From IMG/VR virus record IMGVR_UViG_3300035181_000357, positions 1 to 64,000 of that record: DNA of 64,000 nucleotides; one strand, given 5' to 3'. The notes beneath the pieces are model-generated. The model had not been told where the DNA came from. It was given only the letters and a program-made list of their open reading frames with translations, and ran no database searches. This document shows, piece after piece, positions 1 through 9,932 of this stretch; the stretch's first letter is position 1; the number at the start of each line of letters is the position of its first letter. The translations under genes were made by a program, and so were the position numbers.

Positions 1-2224
1 CTGTTCTTGAATTGAATGAATCTACCTTTGTTCCAGTTAGATAGGTGCTATTGTCATAACTAATTGTAGTTCCACTAGCCTTTACAAACCCAGTTCCGTT
101 TAAGGCCGCTTGTCTACTTGTATCTACAGGATGAACATGGTCTTGTCTTGCGGTTAAAGTAGAAGTTCCTACTGCTACTGTTCCATCCATTAAGGGAGCT
201 ACAGAAGCTAAACCAGTAATGGCATTAAATGAAACAGCTAAAACATTGCCAGTAGTATCTAATGTCATACCATTAGCGGCATCAATAGTAGCATCAGTGT
301 AATTTGCTAACCCATTACTCTGGAATAATTTTATTTTAGAACCGGAACCAATTGCTAAACCTCCTTCAGTATTACCAGTTTTAAGTAGTGATAATACTGG
401 AGCATTATTAGTTGCAACCCCACCATAAATACGAACATAGTTTTGTTGAGACCCTACATTAGTTCCAACATTAATACTTCCTGTTGAACTAGCTGCTGTA
501 GAAACAGTAAAATTGGTTCCAGATAAATACGCCAACGCTAATGTTTGAGCTTGATTAGTCCATTGAAATCCACCAGCATCTACACCACAGATAAATCTAG
601 TTATATTATTAGCATCGGAAGATAAGCTAAAGAGGTTAACTGTTGTTCCACCGCTTGTCTTACCTTGAAAATAAGTGGAGTTTGTTGCTAGAATTATATT
701 GCCGGAAAAACTACCATATCCACCACAAACAATTGGAATATAACCTGAGGTAGTTAAGGAGTTAGAATTCAAAGTCATTAATGTGTAAGGAGTTACTATA
801 GCATCGGCAGTTACAGAAGCGGATAGACCATAGAATGTAAAAGAGCCGCTCTTCATTGATAAATAAGTGTGGCCATAACTAGCATGAGTATTTAATGTTC
901 TAACTTGGTCAGAAACGGTATCAGCAGGATTTACATAAATATTATTACCAATAATAGTAGAAGCGGCTGAATATGTTTGACCAACAAAGCTATACAAAGT
1001 ACCATTAAGTGTTAATTTTATACCCCCATTAATATTACCACTAATATCAAATACTCCAGCTTGCGCTTGATTTAAATGATAGTGACCATTAGTAGCATCA
1101 CCACCTAATAGACCACTTAAACCTTCATGGTTAGTAATAGAGGCTTGACTAATTGAAGTCTTAGATCCAGTTACTGCTTCAATGCGACAAGAACCAGTAG
1201 CACCACTATATGCAGCACCAGTTCCTGTTCTTAGTGTAATCTGGTAAAGAGGAACGATTTCTTGAAAAGGTAAATTTCCAAGAGACAGATTTGCATAAGT
1301 TTCAGCCTGAGCTAAAGCTAATGATGTAAATATGTTTTGGCCTGGAATAATGATGTATTGGAATAAAGGATCCAATGAAGTTGTAGCAAATACGAAATAA
1401 TTAATATAACGTGATGCTATACCTTCTGTTAACTGCCAAGTTGCTCCAGTATATTGATTGTATTGTGGGAATGTAGTTCCAACTCCAAATGGAATAGTAT
1501 TTGTTTTAGTCCAGGTCCAGGTTCCTGTTGCGCCCGTTCTATTAAAAATAGTGTATGGACCATTATCAGCTAATACTGATGTATCAAAGATAATATCTTC
1601 ATCTGCTACCTTACCAGTAGCGATAGAATACGTATTAAATGCGTTAGTTGCGTTACCACCAGCGCCAGCTAAGTCGTAACCAGAAATAGCAAATCCGCTT
1701 AATGCCTCAGTTCCATTTACATTATGTAGGTAATAATGTGTCGACGGATCCATGGTATCACCATGGCGTTCTTCAAAGCAGAACCCATCAGCTAGGGTTG
1801 AATCCCAATAAACATATGCTACTTGAGCAGTTGTCAGAATGTTCCAAGGTGTGGAAGACTGCTGGAAAGTACCTGTATTATCAAAATAAATGAAATACCC
1901 ACCAGTTACATTAGGTAATGTAGTAGTCTGTGTAGTCTTAGTATAAACTACACCATTTACAGTGAATGTAAAATTAGATCCTGTAGGAGCTAGAGTAACT
2001 ACTCGAGTCGTTGAGTTAAATGTTAGAGTAGTACTTGTCCTATCAGGGAATCCTGTCTTTAGAGCTGTTTGATTTGTTAGAGCTAGGGTGCCAGTTAAAC
2101 TAGGTAGCGTATAAACTTGATCAGCTGTTAGAGTTGAGGGATCGAATAGTCCACCAAATCCTCCTCCTGTCTTTCGGACAGTTAAGGATGTAGAGATTTC
2201 CGTTGGATTTTTAATACGATACAT
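1..2224 (-). CDS. Tail fibre / long structural protein, runs off the window edge (C-terminus missing)
   Basis: Not in the ORF track because it has no stop in the window. Manual translation from ATG at 2224 (MYRIKNPTEIST...) stays open to base 1. It is G/T/S/N-rich, with HEGLSGLLGG..GHYHL and TARQDHVHP motifs typical of phage fibre proteins. Confidence 0.75.
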   Translation of the reverse strand, partial: MYRIKNPTEISTSLTVRKTGGGFGGLFDPSTLTADQVYTLPSLTGTLALTNQTALKTGFPDRTSTTLTFNSTTRVVTLAPTGSNFTFTVNGVVYTKTTQTTTLPNVTGGYFIYFDNTGTFQQSSTPWNILTTAQVAYVYWDSTLADGFCFEERHGDTMDPSTHYYLHNVNGTEALSGFAISGYDLAGAGGNATNAFNTYSIATGKVADEDIIFDTSVLADNGPYTIFNRTGATGTWTWTKTNTIPFGVGTTFPQYNQYTGATWQLTEGIASRYINYFVFATTSLDPLFQYIIIPGQNIFTSLALAQAETYANLSLGNLPFQEIVPLYQITLRTGTGAAYSGATGSCRIEAVTGSKTSISQASITNHEGLSGLLGGDATNGHYHLNQAQAGVFDISGNINGGIKLTLNGTLYSFVGQTYSAASTIIGNNIYVNPADTVSDQVRTLNTHASYGHTYLSMKSGSFTFYGLSASVTADAIVTPYTLMTLNSNSLTTSGYIPIVCGGYGSFSGNIILATNSTYFQGKTSGGTTVNLFSLSSDANNITRFICGVDAGGFQWTNQAQTLALAYLSGTNFTVSTAASSTGSINVGTNVGSQQNYVRIYGGVATNNAPVLSLLKTGNTEGGLAIGSGSKIKLFQSNGLANYTDATIDAANGMTLDTTGNVLAVSFNAITGLASVAPLMDGTVAVGTSTLTARQDHVHPVDTSRQAALNGTGFVKASGTTISYDNSTYLTGTKVDSFNSRT

Positions 2225-2562
2225 TACTTACCTCTGGCCTTTCTAAGTATCCAGGCCTTTTTCATATTTTCTATATATTCTTCAGTGAATTTCTTTGATT
2301 TACCTTTGGTTGCTCCCCTAACAGGTTCACATTTCTCTAAAACATGAAATTCCCAATCAGATTCATTATATTTATTCCAAGAATTCTGTAATTCAGGATT
2401 GTGTCTATAACTTCTCAACCGTCTTATATGTGTTAAGATTCTTCCCCTAATATCTACTGAGCTTCCTATATACCATTTATCATTCTGAGTATTTTTAATT
2501 CCATATACACCAGATATTTTAGGTATATGTGTAATTGTATCTATGTGGTATAATAGGGCCAT
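2224..2562 (-). CDS. GIY-YIG homing endonuclease, internally truncated
   Basis: ISGVYGIKN...KWYIGSS.DI.GR...H...L....HN..LQ.SWNKY....WEF.VLE is the I-TevI/Seg-type catalytic N-terminus. It jumps straight to a short basic tail. Confidence 0.8.
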   Translation of the reverse strand: MALLYHIDTITHIPKISGVYGIKNTQNDKWYIGSSVDIRGRILTHIRRLRSYRHNPELQNSWNKYNESDWEFHVLEKCEPVRGATKGKSKKFTEEYIENMKKAWILRKARGK

Positions 2563-5425: not shown

Positions 5426-6106
5426 CTAGACTGGCAATGAGATTCTAAATAGCTGAATTATTCTAGAAAATGCCCCAGAGTTATCCGTGGTCACACGTAG
5501 ACTGAGATTCCCAACAGAAATAATGGAATCGAAGGATGTTCCACAGGCAACGCCTATTGCACATCCAACAGTCTGGAATATGTTTACGTTTGTACCATCG
5601 TGAATTAGATAAATTTGACCTGTCTCATATCCAGAATTATCAGAATTTCTAATAGAATAAGTATATTGGACTGCTCTATAAACTGCTATTGCCAACGAAT
5701 CGATAATAATATTTGGAGAATTGGTGTTCACTGTTGCAGAAAAATTACTGGTGAAGATTGGAGCTTCTACTGATCCTGTAAATTCTGTAGTTCGATCTGC
5801 ATTTATTCTGGCTATGTCAGCATTAGAAGAATCACGAACAACAAATACAGTATTTAAAGTATCATAGCCTTTAAAACTAACAGGACCAAGCGCATTAGTA
5901 ATGGTGATGTTGGTACCACCATTATATGCTCCCTGTAGACTTCCACTAGTTCCAGAACCACCGACGACCAACGATGGATCGATCTTCCCATCGACCCCTG
6001 TGATTACTACTTTACCAGCATCCGCTATTCCAGTACTAACGTCAACAGTAAATATCTGTCCAAACGTAGCTGGGTTATTGGGATTCCTGGTAAGAAGAGT
6101 ATACAA
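5426..6106 (-). CDS. Virion structural protein
   Basis: C-terminal YRAVQYTYSI...ETGQIYLIHDG...F...I..GNLSL domain resembles the C-terminal YRSVRIEYQL domain of the neighbouring 921-aa protein. Confidence 0.55.
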   Translation of the reverse strand: MYTLLTRNPNNPATFGQIFTVDVSTGIADAGKVVITGVDGKIDPSLVVGGSGTSGSLQGAYNGGTNITITNALGPVSFKGYDTLNTVFVVRDSSNADIARINADRTTEFTGSVEAPIFTSNFSATVNTNSPNIIIDSLAIAVYRAVQYTYSIRNSDNSGYETGQIYLIHDGTNVNIFQTVGCAIGVACGTSFDSIISVGNLSLRVTTDNSGAFSRIIQLFRISLPV

Positions 6107-6136: not shown

Positions 6137-6646
6137 TTATTCTCTTCGTCTCATTCTTTCCAGGACTATCTCAGCAATGGACACAGATACGAATTCATCA
6201 ATGTTCCTACCGAAATTTCCGAGGGTCTTAATCAGAGAGCTCGATACCTCGACATACTTGGGACTTGGTGTGATATAGATAGTGCTTACGAATGGATTTA
6301 AGTGATGGTTTATATTTTCGATAGAGCGTTCGTAATTGAAATCTTCAGAAGATCTCAATCCCCTCAACATTACCCATATCTCTCTAGATGCGGCATAATC
6401 TACACAAAGATCACCATCTGTTAGCACATCTATGGTTATCCTACTTAGATCATCTGGACTAAATTTACTATCTAGAGATCTGTAGATTAAATCCATTCTT
6501 TCATGTTTTTCAAACAGATATTTTTTACCAGGATTATCAGCAATAAGAATAGTCAGGTGCTTAAATAGTATAAGACCTTGTCTTATAGTATCTATATGTC
6601 CTAGATGAACTGGATCAAACGACCCAGCATATAATCCCTTCTCCAT
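6137..6646 (-). CDS. coaD: Phosphopantetheine adenylyltransferase
   Basis: LYAGSFDPVHLGH (HxGH), NPGKKYLF...ER, RGLRSSEDFNYE and VSSSLIK match the PPAT signature set; 169 aa is the typical length. Confidence 0.88.
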   Translation of the reverse strand: MEKGLYAGSFDPVHLGHIDTIRQGLILFKHLTILIADNPGKKYLFEKHERMDLIYRSLDSKFSPDDLSRITIDVLTDGDLCVDYAASREIWVMLRGLRSSEDFNYERSIENINHHLNPFVSTIYITPSPKYVEVSSSLIKTLGNFGRNIDEFVSVSIAEIVLERMRRRE

Positions 6647-7628
6647 ACAACGCCTCTTCTATCAAGCTAAAGATAGTCCTACTAGTATGGAGTCTGAATC
6701 CTGCAGCACGATCATGGCCTCCACCACCTTTGAATGTACTAGCTATATATCCTGCACTAATTTTATCATTAGAACGTAAGCTAACAGATAAACCTATCTC
6801 GGTCTTACCATCTAATGTAATGTTCCTAAGTTCCCAACCTACGATCAAGTCCATGCCATCTAGACGCAACATCTCGGCCAGATCACTGATACTCGAGTCT
6901 CCATTATAGAAGGCCACATTGAAACCATTTATAGTTTTTAGTATACAGTTCTTTTTACGATTTAATGTTCTTAACTGATCTGTCTTGAACATGATAGAAG
7001 CCAGCTGTCTGTCATGTGGGGTTGGAATCCCATAGTATGAATTACCAAGCAGATTTAGATATAGAGATTGAGATCTAGACTCCTCGAATCTGGGATCATC
7101 AGATAGGAAACAATCAGCAATCCCTGCTAGCTCAGCTGCAGAAGTATCATCGCTAGAAATCCACGAAAACTGTAGTGCGACTTCATAAGCAAGAACAGCC
7201 CCAGACTCACCCTTACTATTAAGTCCGAACAGAATCTGGTTGGGATATTTTTCAATATAAGGAGCCAGATCAGCCAATCTACTGACATGGTGATCCAAAA
7301 TCTTCGCACCAGCTTTTAAGAAATCCTCTAACTGATCTGCTGGAGGACATGTATCCACAAACAGAGAATTCTCTGTAACGGATATTTTCTTATATGCTGT
7401 AACAGGATATAAGAAATCTGCATTATCCATGTTCTCGAACGGGACATACTTAAGTAGAAGATTTCTACCCATGATACCATCAGGACAGTAACTGTGAAAA
7501 TATAGTCTCTTAGTCTTCTCAATATTCTCTGAGAAATCCGACAACATGTCATCATTAATTATCTCTAACTGGTCTAATCTTAACATATCATCCTCAGATA
7601 ATAAGTACGGGACCGAAATCCCGTACAC
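6615..7628 (-). CDS. DHH/DHHA1 phosphoesterase (NrnA-like)
   Basis: HSYCPDG, FVD, ILDHH, and C-terminal SLRS...GGGGHDRAAGF. Confidence 0.85.
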   Translation of the reverse strand: MYGISVPYLLSEDDMLRLDQLEIINDDMLSDFSENIEKTKRLYFHSYCPDGIMGRNLLLKYVPFENMDNADFLYPVTAYKKISVTENSLFVDTCPPADQLEDFLKAGAKILDHHVSRLADLAPYIEKYPNQILFGLNSKGESGAVLAYEVALQFSWISSDDTSAAELAGIADCFLSDDPRFEESRSQSLYLNLLGNSYYGIPTPHDRQLASIMFKTDQLRTLNRKKNCILKTINGFNVAFYNGDSSISDLAEMLRLDGMDLIVGWELRNITLDGKTEIGLSVSLRSNDKISAGYIASTFKGGGGHDRAAGFRLHTSRTIFSLIEEALYGEGIICWVV

Positions 7629-7641
7629 ATAATCCTTCTAT

Positions 7642-7806
7642 TTATTTAGATATCGTACATTCCTTACATTCACAATATTCACATTTGACACAGTAGAAAT
7701 AGTCACCCTCTTTATCATGAACTAAAGGAGCATCTATAGTAACTTCCTGACCTTTGTATCTGGCATGAATTTCACAACCGTTAGGGCAAACTCGATCACT
7801 GTCCAC
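7642..7806 (-). CDS. Small Cys-rich protein (54 aa, GTG start)
   Basis: Manual translation MDSDRVCPNGCEIH...YCVKCEYCECKEC fills the intergenic gap; it is below the ORF-track length cutoff. Confidence 0.45.
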   Translation of the reverse strand: MDSDRVCPNGCEIHARYKGQEVTIDAPLVHDKEGDYFYCVKCEYCECKECTISK

Positions 7807-8551
7807 TTAAGATCTCGTTAATGAAGTCTTTAGCTTCCTGCCAAGTCAACACAGCACTAGCAGCAGCGACTTCATCATAATCCATATCTAATTTGCTGGC
7901 AATGTATCGGATAGCAGCTTCAGGACCGTTCTTGACTTCGATGAAGAACTTACTGAGATTCCCTTCTGCGAAGGATACGAATTGGTTACTCTTATTAGAA
8001 TCTTCGATTCTTTCAAGCATCTCTAGATTGGATTGTTTGTCATCTTCATTCCAGGAATTACCAGCTTCATCAAGCACACGTACAATTCTGGAATTAGGGG
8101 ATGAAGTCTTAGTGTTACCTGCTGTCAGGAATTCTGAGACAGCCTCAGACTCAGTGGCCAAACTAACTCGACCGAGTGAGCCAAACTTGATACGACCTAG
8201 GGAACGTAAGTGGAGATCAAGAGTAACTACTTCTGTCCCGACTTGCAATGCACATTCCTCATTGTCTAGAAGCAGACCACCAGATAGAAGGTAGTAGAGC
8301 TGGTCTGAGCTAACCTGAATACTAACAGCCACAGACTTAACATCTGGAGAAGCAATCTCTTCGTCGTCCTCGGCATAGTCTTTAAGGTGCTCAGCATAGA
8401 TATCAGCGACTTCTTTGTTGTGCTTAGAGTCTAAGATTCCAACGATATAGTAAGTTGGGAGCTCATCACTATCTTTCAGATGCTGGAAAAGATTCCAGCT
8501 AATCTCTAGTGCCTCAGCTTGTTTCTCGGTAATTGGTGTAAATTGATACAT
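7796..8551 (-). CDS. Hypothetical acidic protein
   Basis: 251-aa ORF in the operon with an upstream GAGG RBS; no recognised motif. Confidence 0.6.
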   Translation of the reverse strand: MYQFTPITEKQAEALEISWNLFQHLKDSDELPTYYIVGILDSKHNKEVADIYAEHLKDYAEDDEEIASPDVKSVAVSIQVSSDQLYYLLSGGLLLDNEECALQVGTEVVTLDLHLRSLGRIKFGSLGRVSLATESEAVSEFLTAGNTKTSSPNSRIVRVLDEAGNSWNEDDKQSNLEMLERIEDSNKSNQFVSFAEGNLSKFFIEVKNGPEAAIRYIASKLDMDYDEVAAASAVLTWQEAKDFINEILSGQ

Positions 8552-8589: not shown

Positions 8590-8913
8590 TCAGATATGAT
8601 GGATTACCCCTTGCGAATCTGGTTTAGACCACATTCGCTTTTTATTTATCTCCATTTTACGGAGTACTTCATACTCCATATCGAAGCCCATCTGACCAGC
8701 TAAGTTCAGTGCGACGATTACAATATCGGCTAATTCTTCCTTCGCCTTGTCCAAGTCTTGTACTTCCCACTCTACTTTAAGCTCATTTAGCTCTTTTTCG
8801 AGGTGAAGCATCTGCCCATCAGGTGTACGATCTGGGATCTTGGCATCTGCCCAGGTCTTTATACCATCTTGAATATTTTTCAATCTTCTCTTACTTTTGA
8901 ACAAAGAAATCAT
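8590..8913 (-). CDS. MazG-like / DUF550-type dNTP pyrophosphohydrolase
   Basis: HLEKELNEL...EELADIVIV (ExxE..ExxD) and KMEINKKRMW...G.IHH C-terminus. Confidence 0.75.
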   Translation of the reverse strand: MISLFKSKRRLKNIQDGIKTWADAKIPDRTPDGQMLHLEKELNELKVEWEVQDLDKAKEELADIVIVALNLAGQMGFDMEYEVLRKMEINKKRMWSKPDSQGVIHHI

Positions 8914-9091
8914 TCCTTATCTCCCCAAACATGTCTAGTAGGTTTCTAGCTAATAGGATCTCACCATCATTAACACCTTCGTCATAAGCAGACGAATTAT
9001 CTGTGTACTGCTCAGCCAAGAAATATGGATCATCACAGGCTGCAGTTTCAGCTGCTTTAGTCTTAAGGTAGTCTAGTAATCGTTCATTCAT
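8891..9091 (-). CDS. Hypothetical protein
   Basis: 66 aa, overlaps both neighbours in operon fashion. Confidence 0.55.
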   Translation of the reverse strand: MNERLLDYLKTKAAETAACDDPYFLAEQYTDNSSAYDEGVNDGEILLARNLLDMFGEIRNDFFVQK

Positions 9092-9932
9092 AATCTGATC
9101 CTAAGAGCCATCGAGTAAACTTGTAATCCTTAGGAACATCTTCGATAGGATTGATTCCATATGCTTGAAGGAATCCACATTCTGCAGCACAACTTATTCT
9201 CGGAACTACCAGATCTGCATACATAGACTCATCCCCGGTTCCTACGATATTTCTGACTAGATCAAAGTGACGCTCATACACATGAAAGCTATCTGCTGTA
9301 TGATAGTATGTACCCAACCCTAACTCAGGGTAAACTTCTTTGAGATAAACAAATACCATCTCGTGGATAAAACTGAAACATGGTGCGTCATTTCCCATAC
9401 CAAACACAGCATCCTGTGATCGCATGTGCACACTCATGTTGACTCTGTTGTCTCTAATCCTGAAATTGAGACTATAAGTACATGGAACATCCTTTGCTTC
9501 ATCAATAAAATGTTCTGGCTCAGAGCCTAGGATAATAATACTGGCTCTACGACTATCTCTGTCTTTTATCAATTCCCTGACGACTCGTGTCATACCACCT
9601 TTGGTGAAGACATAGTGTCCGTAGTTGGAGTTAATATATGGGAGACCTCTAGAGTCTAGAACCTTAACATCTCCCCATATCTTTGCATGATCACAGATAG
9701 ACATATCATATCTGTCACCACGAAGATACCATAGGAATTCTTTCTTAATGTAATTGATATTTAATTTTCTATCTTTGAAATTGGTGAATCGAACGTATGG
9801 TTCTAACTCATAACTAAAATGTTCACACTCTAAGACAGGAAGGCCTCGAGGAGTTGACATCTTCCCTTTATCGATAAGCCTGGTATACACTTTATAGAAC
9901 TCGTTCCAGCTAACATATGAATCTAATGTCAT
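9084..9932 (-). CDS. Thymidylate-synthase-family enzyme, probable dCMP hydroxymethylase/methylase
   Basis: EFLWYLRG, NSNYG, DSRRA, DVPCT (catalytic Cys), MRSQDAVFGMGND, HVYERHF. Asp sits at the ThyA Asn177 position, as in T4 gp42 (MRSNDVVFGFRND). Confidence 0.8.
   Translation of the reverse strand: MTLDSYVSWNEFYKVYTRLIDKGKMSTPRGLPVLECEHFSYELEPYVRFTNFKDRKLNINYIKKEFLWYLRGDRYDMSICDHAKIWGDVKVLDSRGLPYINSNYGHYVFTKGGMTRVVRELIKDRDSRRASIIILGSEPEHFIDEAKDVPCTYSLNFRIRDNRVNMSVHMRSQDAVFGMGNDAPCFSFIHEMVFVYLKEVYPELGLGTYYHTADSFHVYERHFDLVRNIVGTGDESMYADLVVPRISCAAECGFLQAYGINPIEDVPKDYKFTRWLLGSDYE

What the first reader, a model, noticed from the sequence alone, without database searches (positions are those of the whole stretch)
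6137..7628. Phage-encoded CoaD overlapping a DHH/DHHA1 phosphoesterase
Seen: a complete PPAT motif set, with the gene overlapping a DHH gene by 32 nt. Known: CoaD makes dephospho-CoA from phosphopantetheine and ATP; NrnA-type DHH enzymes hydrolyse pAp (a by-product of phosphopantetheinyl transfer) and short or cyclic oligonucleotides; dephospho-CoA can serve as a non-canonical RNA 5' cap. Inference: a two-gene CoA module for cofactor boosting, recycling, RNA capping or counter-defence. To my knowledge CoaD is not a commonly described phage auxiliary gene.
Basis: partly seen in the sequence, partly recalled or inferred. Interest (0 to 1): 0.65.

Follow-up and report, generated by a model that had tools for sequence, protein, structure and literature searches.

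The report
Phage CoaD next to DHH phosphoesterase
A large uncultured phage from sediment and microbial mats carries a well-conserved coenzyme A biosynthesis gene (coaD) directly behind a divergent DHH phosphoesterase gene; the pair is inherited in part of a small phage clade, but coaD looks like a dispensable cofactor-salvage extra rather than an obligate partner of the DHH enzyme.

Summary
Both genes are present as described. coaD is at 6137-6646(-). The DHH/DHHA1 gene is at 6615-7586(-), or to 7628 from an upstream GTG. They overlap by 32 nt.

The CoaD protein clears NCBI's coaD equivalog cut-off, matches only PPAT structures, and keeps every catalytic and substrate residue checked. It is not the phage's NMNAT, because the genome has a separate NadM-Nudix and NAMPT pair.

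The DHH protein folds confidently as a two-domain DHH/DHHA1 enzyme. It belongs to a subfamily with an invariant Cys where the first Asp of motif I normally sits.

DHH followed by CoaD is found in four of eight lineages of one phage clade, and the divergence of the two proteins tracks. The three closest relatives and one further lineage lack coaD but keep DHH inside a conserved MazG-unknown-DHH block.

The nearest other CoaDs lie in phage NAD+-salvage clusters (NadM-Nudix, NAMPT, sometimes CoaE). The 210 kb held has no CoaE, phosphopantetheinyl transferase or carrier protein.

Verdict: a true phage PPAT auxiliary gene, already known from annotation and viromics, that shares an ancestral gene order with DHH. 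A functional CoA-recycling pair is possible but unproven. Interest is moderate to low.

The parts
6137..6646 (-). coaD: 169-aa phosphopantetheine adenylyltransferase (PPAT) homologue
   Evidence: ORF. TIGR01510 equivalog scores 140.7 bits against a 103.3 cut-off. All 34 PDB sequence hits are PPAT. All 12 key residues are consensus.
6615..7586 (-). DHH/DHHA1 phosphoesterase, 323 aa from ATG 7586 (337 aa if GTG 7628 is used). Subfamily with HxxCxDG in place of the DxD motif I.
   Evidence: Invariant residues: H31 C34 D36 G37 D78 D98 H99 H100 D158 R271 G288-H291. AF2 pLDDT is 93.9. Foldseek matches NrnA, TmPDE, DhhP, GdpP and RecJ2.
6615..6646 (-). 32-nt overlap. It encodes CoaD residues 1-10 and, in another frame, a non-conserved, low-confidence C-terminal tail of DHH (YGEGIICWVV).
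   Evidence: Sequence. DHH homologues end about 9 residues earlier. pLDDT drops to 73 and 44 over the last residues.
6653..6656 (-). GAGG Shine-Dalgarno-like site 6 nt upstream of the coaD ATG, inside the DHH coding sequence
   Evidence: Read directly from the sequence.
7592..7595 (-). GAGG Shine-Dalgarno-like site 5 nt upstream of the DHH ATG at 7586
   Evidence: Read directly from the sequence.
7605..7626 (-). 9-bp (5 GC) hairpin between the 54-aa Cys-rich gene and the DHH ATG; terminator-like with a weak T tail. Function unknown.
   Evidence: sequence.
7642..7806 (-). 54-aa Cys-rich (zinc-ribbon-like) ORF upstream of DHH
   Evidence: No Pfam or PHROG hit. A 54-aa gene occupies the same place in L005.
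7796..8551 (-). Conserved 251-aa protein of unknown fold that precedes DHH in seven of the eight relatives
   Evidence: Seven-sequence alignment A4. The same position is occupied. No family hit. AF2 pLDDT is 84.7 with no fold match (Foldseek E >= 0.085; VIA Z <= 4.2).
8590..8913 (-). MazG-like nucleotide pyrophosphohydrolase; start of the conserved MazG-unknown-DHH block
   Evidence: Present.
5426..6106 (-). First gene of the variable tail-fibre-like module immediately downstream of coaD (30-nt gap)
   Evidence: The N-terminal 48 aa are 52% identical to the gene after coaD in L019. The downstream 921-aa protein hits DUF5907 weakly.

Best explanation
Two separate enzymes sit at the 3' end of the phage's nucleotide-metabolism and replication gene block.

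The DHH/DHHA1 gene is a fixed member of that block (SbcD-like, dCMP deaminase, deoxyribosyltransferase-like, ThyA-like, MazG, unknown, DHH). I infer that it is a Mn2+-type phosphoesterase that trims short oligonucleotides, and perhaps pAp-type nucleotides, to mononucleotides for reuse.

coaD is a genuine PPAT. I infer that it makes dephospho-CoA from 4'-phosphopantetheine and ATP, and that the host's CoaE finishes the pathway.

The order DHH then CoaD was most likely already present in the ancestor of a small clade of sediment and mat jumbo phages. coaD was later lost two or three times while DHH stayed.

The 32-nt overlap reflects tight packing and probably translational coupling. It does not show a physical or catalytic partnership.

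Related phage CoaDs lie inside NAD+-salvage clusters. The gene is therefore best read as a dispensable adenylylated-cofactor maintenance gene (an AMG) that keeps CoA supply up during infection.
For: PPAT identity (shown): TIGR01510 is over its cut-off for the window protein and for the CoaDs of L019, L053, L058, L059 and L060. The PDB sequence search returns only PPAT. All residues shown by mutagenesis and structures to matter are consensus in the window protein (PMC12784347).

Not the NMNAT: a separate NadM-Nudix and NAMPT lie at 168.5-171.3 kb.

DHH is the core gene and coaD the accessory: all 8 clade members keep DHH, 7 of them with the unknown before it and a MazG-like gene in the block. 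coaD follows DHH in only 4 of them.

The pair is inherited:
- It has the same position and orientation with tight junctions: 32-nt overlap, 22-nt overlap, 1-nt gap, and one ORF overlapping the DHH stop.
- CoaD-positive lineages lie on both sides of the basal split of the DHH tree.
- CoaD and DHH pairwise identities track across all six pairs: 48/46, 31/35, 34/37, 27/35, 28/36 and 57/77.
- Monophyly of the four CoaDs is not rejected (AU p = 0.52).

Cofactor-salvage affinity: the nearest other CoaDs are in NadM-Nudix, NAMPT, CoaE, CoaD (L059) and NadM-Nudix, NAMPT, CoaD next to an endolysin (L060). Mx1 has CoaD, an NMNAT-like gene and NAMPT together.

Overlaps are routine in this operon.
Against: - No enzyme activity or expression data exist, and no RNA runs hold the sequence.
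- Retention of the adjacency down to about 30% identity could reflect selection for co-expression of a functional pair.
- Parsimony on presence and absence alone does not separate repeated loss from repeated gain: 3 changes either way on the ML tree.
- The CoaD tree is poorly resolved.
- The genome record is only about 69% complete, so CoaE or other CoA genes could lie in the missing part.
- The substrate of the DHH enzyme is not determinable from sequence.
- Four CoaD-bearing records (two Lak phages, one uncultured phage and one unverified phage clone) show no NAD genes within 10 kb of coaD, and a Brevundimonas phage shows none within about 4 kb, so the NAD association is not general.
Confidence: 0.6

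Rival explanations
1. Functional two-gene CoA recycling module. Cleavage of CoA by a Nudix CoA pyrophosphatase, or transfer of its phosphopantetheine arm, yields 3',5'-ADP (pAp) and, in the first case, 4'-phosphopantetheine. The DHH enzyme, acting as an NrnA-like pAp phosphatase, would remove inhibitory pAp. CoaD would re-adenylylate 4'-phosphopantetheine. Together they would rebuild or boost the CoA pool, possibly against a host response.
For: The adjacency with tight coupling persists in four lineages down to 31-35% identity. Some DHH/DHHA1 enzymes are bifunctional nanoRNase and pAp phosphatases: PDB titles for NrnA and an archaeal PAP phosphatase appear among the fold and sequence hits. CoaD sits in cofactor-reconstitution-like clusters in other phages.
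Against: Four lineages, including the three closest, keep DHH without coaD. The wider CxDG-DHH family occurs in jumbo phages without any CoaD over the cut-off. Phage CoaDs elsewhere have no adjacent DHH. No CoaE, ACPS or carrier protein is found in the 210 kb held. No CoA-depleting defence is known to me.
Confidence: 0.2
2. The DHH protein is a RecJ-like single-strand DNA/RNA exonuclease that serves phage recombination or replication, alongside the SbcCD-like and UvsX/RecA-like genes. It would not be a nucleotide-salvage or pAp enzyme, and CoaD would be unrelated to it.
For: The N-terminal domain profile matches archaeal RecJ best: PfRecJ 5x4h at E = 0.003, then MjRecJ2. RecJ2, RecJ and RecJ-Cdc45 are among the fold hits. 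The surrounding region encodes Metallophos/SbcD-like, AAA/SbcC-like, RecA-like, SNF2 helicase and Toprim proteins.
Against: At 323 aa with only two domains, it has the stand-alone NrnA/TmPDE architecture and lacks the OB-fold and extra domains of RecJ. The best whole-protein sequence and fold matches are the dinucleotide and nanoRNA enzymes TmPDE, NrnA and DhhP. Its immediate neighbours are nucleotide-pool enzymes (MazG, ThyA-like).
Confidence: 0.2
3. The CoaD homologue has been recruited for another adenylyl-transfer reaction. Examples are NMN or another phosphorylated acceptor, or supplying dephospho-CoA as a non-canonical initiating nucleotide for 5' capping of phage RNA, rather than supplying CoA.
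For: Three phage CoaDs sit beside NAD+-salvage genes. Relatives carry substitutions at R88 (L053), Y98 (L053, L058), and D95 and S130 (L019).
Against: The window protein is consensus at all 12 PPAT positions. It clears the PPAT equivalog cut-off while NMNAT models score 15-23 bits. The genome has its own NadM. L059 pairs CoaD with CoaE, which is the canonical two last CoA steps. Nothing in the sequence bears on capping.
Confidence: 0.07
4. Independent insertions: coaD was captured three separate times at the same DHH/tail-fibre junction, which would be a hot spot for morons. The pairing would then have no history and no meaning.
For: The junction borders a hypervariable fibre module that differs in every relative. 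The presence/absence pattern needs 3 changes under either scenario. The window CoaD is no closer to the L053 CoaD (31%) than to bacterial CoaDs (36-39%).
Against: CoaD identity tracks DHH identity in all six pairs. Window and L019 are sisters (97-99) and each other's best hits among 1.8 billion representatives. A tree holding all four together is as likely as the free tree. Orientation and coupling to DHH are identical throughout.
Confidence: 0.12

Closest known systems
Bacterial phosphopantetheine adenylyltransferase CoaD/KdtB (e.g. T. maritima 1VLH, E. coli 1B6T/1QJC, H. pylori PPAT)
   Same: Single-domain protein of about 160-170 aa. It has the (T/S)FDPxxxGH motif, K42, RGLR (R88, R91), D95, Y98, E99, N106 and the SSS (128-130) motif. 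It scores over the TIGR01510 cut-off and 4.7e-26 to 1VLH.
   Different: It is only 36-39% identical to any cellular CoaD found. It is encoded by a phage with no other CoA pathway gene in the 210 kb held. Activity, hexamer formation and CoA feedback inhibition are untested.
Phage-encoded coaD auxiliary genes (Brevundimonas Dolichocephalovirinae jumbo phages, Myxococcus phage Mx1, Lak phages, Microcystis phage PhiMa05; coaD/coaE AMGs in snow viromes)
   Same: The same family, in large phage genomes, annotated as PPAT (PMC8093824; PMC11097641). In Mx1, L059 and L060 it sits with NAMPT and NMNAT, and the window's genome also carries those genes.
   Different: It is 29-35% identical to those in GenBank phages. 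The Brevundimonas and Mx1 proteins fall on the other side of a 95% split in the tree. Only this clade places coaD directly behind a DHH gene.
Stand-alone DHH/DHHA1 phosphoesterases: NrnA (B. subtilis, mycobacterial CnpB/Rv2837c), T. maritima TmPDE (TM1595), Borrelia DhhP, GdpP catalytic domain
   Same: Two-domain fold of about 320 aa. It has motifs II (D78), III (D98-H99-H100) and IV (D158), and the DHHA1 S-x-R-S and GGGH motifs.
   Different: Identity is about 15%. There is no Pfam DHH (PF01368) or NCBIfam hit. Motif I reads H-x-x-C-x-D-G, with an invariant Cys where the first metal-binding Asp of DxD is expected (the placement is inferred from spacing). The substrate is unknown.
Phage NAD+ salvage/reconstitution genes (NadM-Nudix or NMNAT plus NAMPT; called NARP2 in the counter-defence literature, cited from my own knowledge and not checked here)
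   Same: These are also adenylyltransferase-based cofactor rebuilding genes in phages. They are physically clustered with CoaD in L059, L060 and Mx1, and present in this genome.
   Different: The cofactor is different. In the window's phage the NAD genes lie about 160 kb from coaD. No evidence links CoaD to any defence system.

Membership tests
PPAT / CoaD (NCBIfam TIGR01510 equivalog) | Whole-protein score above the curated equivalog cut-off | tested here: met
   140.7 bits against a cut-off of 103.3. Relatives score 117-157 bits.
PPAT / CoaD (NCBIfam TIGR01510 equivalog) | Nucleotidyltransferase (T/H)xGH motif with the catalytic His18 | tested here: met
   G8-S-F-D-P-V-H-L-G-H17. H18 is invariant in all 135 aligned rows, including the window. 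Role taken from PMC12784347.
PPAT / CoaD (NCBIfam TIGR01510 equivalog) | 4'-phosphate and ATP phosphate ligands T10, K42, R88, R91 and S128-S130 | tested here: met
   S9, K41, R95, R98 and S135-137 of the window protein, all family consensus. Mutagenesis roles are in PMC12784347.
PPAT / CoaD (NCBIfam TIGR01510 equivalog) | Catalyses 4'-phosphopantetheine + ATP -> dephospho-CoA + PPi | not testable with these tools
   Needs an enzyme assay or complementation.
NMN/NaMN adenylyltransferase (NadD, NadR, NadM) | Score above the curated cut-off of any NMNAT model | tested here: not met
   Best scores are 15-23 bits against cut-offs of 112-409. A separate NadM-Nudix in the genome scores 432 bits against 409.
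DHH/DHHA1 phosphoesterase superfamily | Two-domain DHH + DHHA1 fold | tested here: met
   AF2 pLDDT 93.9. Foldseek probability 1.0 and E about 1e-9 to TmPDE, NrnA, DhhP, RecJ-like and GdpP.
DHH/DHHA1 phosphoesterase superfamily | Motif III DHH, motif II and IV Asp residues, and the DHHA1 GGGH motif | tested here: met
   D78, D98-H99-H100, D158 and G288-G-G-H291 are invariant in 24 family members. Pfam DHHA1 scores 27 bits against 25.9.
DHH/DHHA1 phosphoesterase superfamily | Motif I DxD (two metal-binding Asp residues) | tested here: not met
   The family invariant is H31-x-x-C34-x-D36-G37. Archaeal RecJ has H-R-D-A-D-G at the aligned place. No Pfam PF01368 hit.
NrnA-type bifunctional nanoRNase / pAp phosphatase | Hydrolyses pAp and 2-5-mer RNA | not testable with these tools
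   No NCBIfam match, and no sequence signature known to me separates pAp from oligonucleotide specificity.
Conserved two-gene DHH-CoaD module | Adjacency retained in relatives | tested here: inconclusive
   Present in 4 of 8 lineages of the clade and absent in the 3 closest plus L056.
Conserved two-gene DHH-CoaD module | Co-occurrence outside the clade | tested here: not met
   Five jumbo phages with distant CxDG-DHH proteins have no CoaD over the cut-off. The Brevundimonas phage has the two genes 230 kb apart, and Mx1 has no DHHA1. No DHH lies within about 4-10 kb of coaD (as far as each locus reaches) in the seven other loci tested by tblastn.
Complete phage CoA end-pathway (CoaD + CoaE) | Dephospho-CoA kinase encoded as well | tested here: not met
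   No PF01121 match in the 210,611 bp held. The record is about 69% complete. L059 does have CoaE-CoaD.

The most novel reading that the evidence does not exclude
The DHH-CoaD pair is a phage 'CoA reconstitution' device, analogous to phage NAD+ reconstitution. A host response, or infection stress, would cleave CoA into pAp and 4'-phosphopantetheine. The unusual Cys-containing DHH enzyme would detoxify pAp while the phage PPAT, possibly insensitive to CoA feedback, re-adenylylates phosphopantetheine. The recurrent clustering of phage CoaD (and CoaE) with NadM and NAMPT would mark a general cofactor counter-depletion toolkit.
Probability: 0.08. Interest if true: 0.75.

Novelty: new member of a known kind. 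Interest (0 to 1): 0.35.

Why it matters
If the phage PPAT is active, it adds CoA to the short list of cofactors, NAD+ above all, that large phages maintain themselves. PPAT is described as a key step of CoA synthesis, so one gene could plausibly raise flux. The repeated clustering of phage coaD with NadM-Nudix, NAMPT and sometimes coaE suggests a wider cofactor-salvage toolkit that could be tested experimentally. The DHH subfamily with an invariant Cys in motif I is a small enzymological curiosity. As it stands, the finding is a well-supported annotation with a modest evolutionary story (an inherited pair with repeated loss of coaD). It is not a new system.

Tried and rejected
Searches that found no close relatives:
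- Megablast of the region, and tblastn of the DHH protein, against 50,697 GenBank phages gave no match.
- Single-sequence scans of IMG/VR for both proteins found no relatives.
- Alignment-based scans of IMG/VR and of JGI metagenomes returned only distant (23-26% identical) or generic GGGH hits.

A false negative in the word search:
- The word-based homologue search missed the closest CoaD, L019 at 47% identity.
- I therefore ran the exhaustive profile search once. It showed no closer relative than L019. The next hit, P0085, is only a tandem-duplicated CoaD.

Other dead ends:
- The genome search cannot reach the Logan or JGI records behind L002, L004 and L005. Absence of coaD elsewhere in those genomes is therefore untested; only the syntenic site was examined.
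- The AU test on the 133-row CoaD set did not finish in two 288-s runs. I repeated it on 42 rows.
- A loop insertion I suspected to be clade-specific in CoaD proved common in the family.
- The 63-aa ORF that replaces coaD in L002 does not look like a CoaD remnant by eye (no GSFDP/HxGH motif).
- The conserved 251-aa neighbour gave no family or fold match.
- The promoter scan was not above shuffles.

Tools not used:
- No RNA runs hold the locus.

Full report
**Source.** The window is the first 64 kb of a 210,611-bp IMG/VR virus record that is linear and about 69% complete by CheckV. The same phage occurs on nine contigs from a series of JGI samples and on Logan assemblies. The runs that hold it are sediment and microbial-mat metagenomes, and none is an RNA run. 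GC content is about 40%, and nearly all genes are on the minus strand.

**Observation.** One search confirms a 169-aa ORF at 6137-6646(-) and an ORF at 6615-7628(-), which share 32 nt.
- The coaD ATG at 6646 has GAGG 6 nt upstream. It yields M-E-K-G-L-Y-A-G-S-F-D-P, which matches the N-terminus of bacterial PPATs.
- The DHH stop codon falls inside the F-D codons of that motif.
- The DHH start is better placed at ATG 7586, giving 323 aa. Gene callers use it on 7 of 8 contigs, homologues align from it, and GAGG lies 5 nt upstream.
- The 14 extra codons from GTG 7628 coincide with a 9-bp hairpin.
- The last nine or so residues of DHH, encoded by the overlap, are absent from homologues and modelled with low confidence.
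- Overlaps are the rule in this operon: 14 of 26 junctions overlap by 1-32 nt.

**CoaD identity.**
- The protein scores 140.7 bits on the coaD equivalog TIGR01510, whose cut-off is 103.3. NMNAT models reach only 15-23 bits against cut-offs of 112-409.
- All 34 PDB sequence hits are PPATs, the best being 1VLH at 4.7e-26.
- In a 135-row alignment the window protein carries the consensus residue at T10(S), H18, K42, R88, R91, D95, Y98, E99, N106 and S128-130. These residues bind the 4'-phosphate and the ATP phosphates, and several abolish activity when mutated (PMC12784347).
- The genome separately encodes a bifunctional NadM-Nudix (432 bits against a cut-off of 409) and a NAMPT-type enzyme (620 bits against 405) at 168.5-171.3 kb.
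- 'It is really an NMNAT' is therefore rejected. PPAT activity itself remains an inference.

**DHH identity.**
- Sequence evidence is thin. Pfam DHHA1 scores 27 bits against 25.9, there is no PF01368 or NCBIfam hit, and phrog_4771 scores 6e-18.
- Thirty homologues were found. An alignment of 24 of them shows invariant H31, C34, D36, G37, D78, D98-H99-H100, D158, R271 and G288-G-G-H291.
- The AF2 model is confident, with pLDDT 93.9. It matches TmPDE, mycobacterial and Bacillus NrnA, DhhP, the GdpP catalytic domain and archaeal RecJ2 with Foldseek probability 1.0. A profile search of PDB sequences gives the same set.
- Motif I is H-x-x-C-x-D-G. Against archaeal RecJ (H-R-D-A-D-G) the Cys falls where the first Asp of DxD is expected. 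That placement is inferred from spacing.
- The fold and four of the five motifs place it in the superfamily. The substrate (nanoRNA or nanoDNA, pAp, ssDNA) cannot be read from sequence.

**Context.** Upstream on the same strand lie, in order:
- a RecA/UvsX-like gene and an AAA/SbcC-like gene;
- a dCMP deaminase and a Metallophos/SbcD-like gene;
- an unknown gene and a Nuc_deoxyri_tr2 protein;
- a very divergent ThyA-superfamily protein and a MazG-like gene;
- a conserved 251-aa unknown and a 54-aa Cys-rich ORF;
- then DHH and CoaD.

Downstream begins a variable tail-fibre-like module.

**Is the pairing conserved?**
- The three closest relatives by DHH identity (L004 63%, L002/L003 60%, L005 56%) keep the whole syntenic block up to DHH. 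It is then followed directly by fibre genes or a 58-63-aa ORF, with no coaD.
- L019 (DHH 45%) has a 166-aa CoaD overlapping DHH by 22 nt. It is 47% identical to the window's CoaD and is followed by a homologous fibre N-terminus.
- L053-55 (DHH 32%) have a 171-aa CoaD 1 nt after DHH.
- L057/58 (DHH 33%) have a CoaD ORF overlapping the DHH stop. It has an intact GTFDPFTNGH motif but no canonical start codon; ATA follows AGGAAGG.
- L056 (DHH 38%) has an unrelated gene after DHH.
- On the DHH tree the eight form a 100/100 clade, and CoaD-positive lineages lie on both sides of its basal split. Three changes are needed under either a gain-only or a loss-only history.
- Three lines of evidence favour an ancestral pair with later losses:
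  - The site, orientation and coupling are identical.
  - CoaD and DHH identities co-vary across all six pairs.
  - Window plus L019 and L053 plus L058 are strongly supported pairs, and joint monophyly of the four is not rejected (AU p = 0.52).
- The exhaustive search of 1.8 billion representatives found nothing closer than L019.

**Is the pairing functional?** Several observations argue against an obligate module.
- DHH is always kept and coaD is lost repeatedly.
- Five jumbo phages with distant members of the Cys-type DHH family have no CoaD above the cut-off.
- A Brevundimonas phage has coaD and a DHHA1 gene 230 kb apart, and Mx1 has no DHHA1.
- No DHH lies within 10 kb of coaD in two Lak phages, an uncultured phage and an unverified phage clone, or within the contigs L059 and L060.
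- The record has no CoaE, phosphopantetheinyl transferase or PP-binding carrier.

The CoaDs nearest in the tree instead lie in NadM-Nudix, NAMPT, CoaE, CoaD (L059) and in NadM-Nudix, 107 aa, NAMPT, CoaD with an endolysin nearby (L060, from the same sample as the window). Mx1 has CoaD, an NMNAT-like gene and NAMPT, and that NAMPT is 59% identical to the window genome's. This points to cofactor salvage as the functional neighbourhood of phage CoaD.

A mechanistic link with DHH remains conceivable. pAp and 4'-phosphopantetheine are the two products of CoA pyrophosphatase, which I state from general biochemical knowledge. I give that reading about 0.2.

**Comparison with what is known.**
- tblastn finds CoaD homologues in 67 of 50,697 phage records. 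They are annotated as PPAT in Brevundimonas jumbo phages and in Mx1, and are present in Lak phages.
- At least some of the 67 are bacterial flanks of prophages.
- PhiMa05 lists a PPAT among its metabolic genes (PMC8093824).
- coaD and coaE were reported among abundant viral AMGs in snow viromes together with NAMPT, nadM and nadR (PMC11097641).
- Phage coaD is therefore uncommon but described, and none has been characterised biochemically in the papers found.

**Verdict.** The gene is a true phage PPAT, a new member of a known kind of AMG. It is inherited together with, but dispensable to, a conserved and unusual DHH/DHHA1 enzyme of the phage nucleotide-metabolism block. Interest is 0.35. The most novel reading not excluded is a CoA-reconstitution pair, with probability about 0.08.

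**Limits.**
- All relatives are metagenomic contigs, and several are short.
- The whole genomes of the CoaD-less relatives could not be searched.
- The CoaD tree is weakly resolved.
- There are no expression or activity data.

Noticed in passing
G000:C1:168495-171261 (outside the window; loci L014, L062): The same phage genome carries a NAD+ salvage cluster: a bifunctional NadM-Nudix (337 aa, 432 bits against a cut-off of 409), a 103-aa ORF, and a NAMPT-type phosphoribosyltransferase (470 aa, 620 bits against 405).
   Followed up: partly
L059:2-3845; L060:1705-5206; L017 (Myxococcus phage Mx1):4001-7631: Phage CoaDs related to the window's lie inside NAD+-salvage clusters: NadM-Nudix, NAMPT, CoaE, CoaD in L059; NadM-Nudix, NAMPT, CoaD in L060; and CoaD, an NMNAT-like gene and NAMPT in Mx1. 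This may be a recurrent cofactor-salvage toolkit. No statistics were run.
   Followed up: partly
window 7474-7496 (-), DHH residues 31-37; alignment A1: The whole DHH subfamily (24 metagenomic and phage sequences) has an invariant H-x-x-C-x-D-G, with Cys where the first metal-binding Asp of motif I (DxD) is expected. This may indicate different metal chemistry.
   Followed up: partly
window 7605-7626 (-): A 9-bp, GC-rich hairpin with a weak T tail lies between the 54-aa Cys-rich ORF and the DHH start. It could be a terminator, an attenuator or a processing site that sets DHH-CoaD apart from the upstream genes. Conservation in relatives was not checked.
   Followed up: no
window 7796-8551 (-): A 251-aa protein precedes DHH in seven of the eight clade members (alignment A4). 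It has no Pfam or PHROG hit. Its AF2 model is confident (pLDDT 84.7) but has no significant fold match (Foldseek E >= 0.085; VIA Z <= 4.2).
   Followed up: yes
window 9084-9932 (-): The ThyA-like protein scores only 40-48 bits on thymidylate synthase equivalogs (cut-offs 108-405) and 54 bits on Pfam. It sits with a dCMP deaminase, MazG and a Nuc_deoxyri_tr2 protein. It may be a pyrimidine hydroxymethylase-type enzyme and hint at modified DNA.
   Followed up: partly
window 2224-2562 (-): A GIY-YIG homing-endonuclease-like ORF (112 aa) is wedged between large tail-fibre-like genes. Relatives carry GIY-YIG genes at other places in the block (L004).
   Followed up: no
L058:2645-3055; L053:3770-4285; L019:6891-7391: CoaDs of relatives show signs of relaxed or altered constraint. 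L058 has no canonical start codon (ATA after AGGAAGG). L053 has R88H and Y98H. L058 has Y98H. L019 has D95H and S130Y. All still clear the TIGR01510 cut-off.
   Followed up: partly
P0085, P0094, P0114 (metagenomic proteins): The exhaustive search turned up tandem-duplicated CoaD-CoaD proteins and CoaE-CoaD fusions of about 370-380 aa among the best hits.
   Followed up: no
window 7642-7806 (-): A 54-aa ORF with about nine Cys residues in C-x-x-x-C and C-x-x-C patterns (zinc-ribbon-like), with no family hit. A 54-aa gene occupies the same position in L005.
   Followed up: no
and 41/44 (method): The word-indexed homologue search missed the closest CoaD relative (L019, 47% identical). It was found only through the neighbour's context. 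Blank results from that tool at under 50% identity should not be read as absence.
   Followed up: yes
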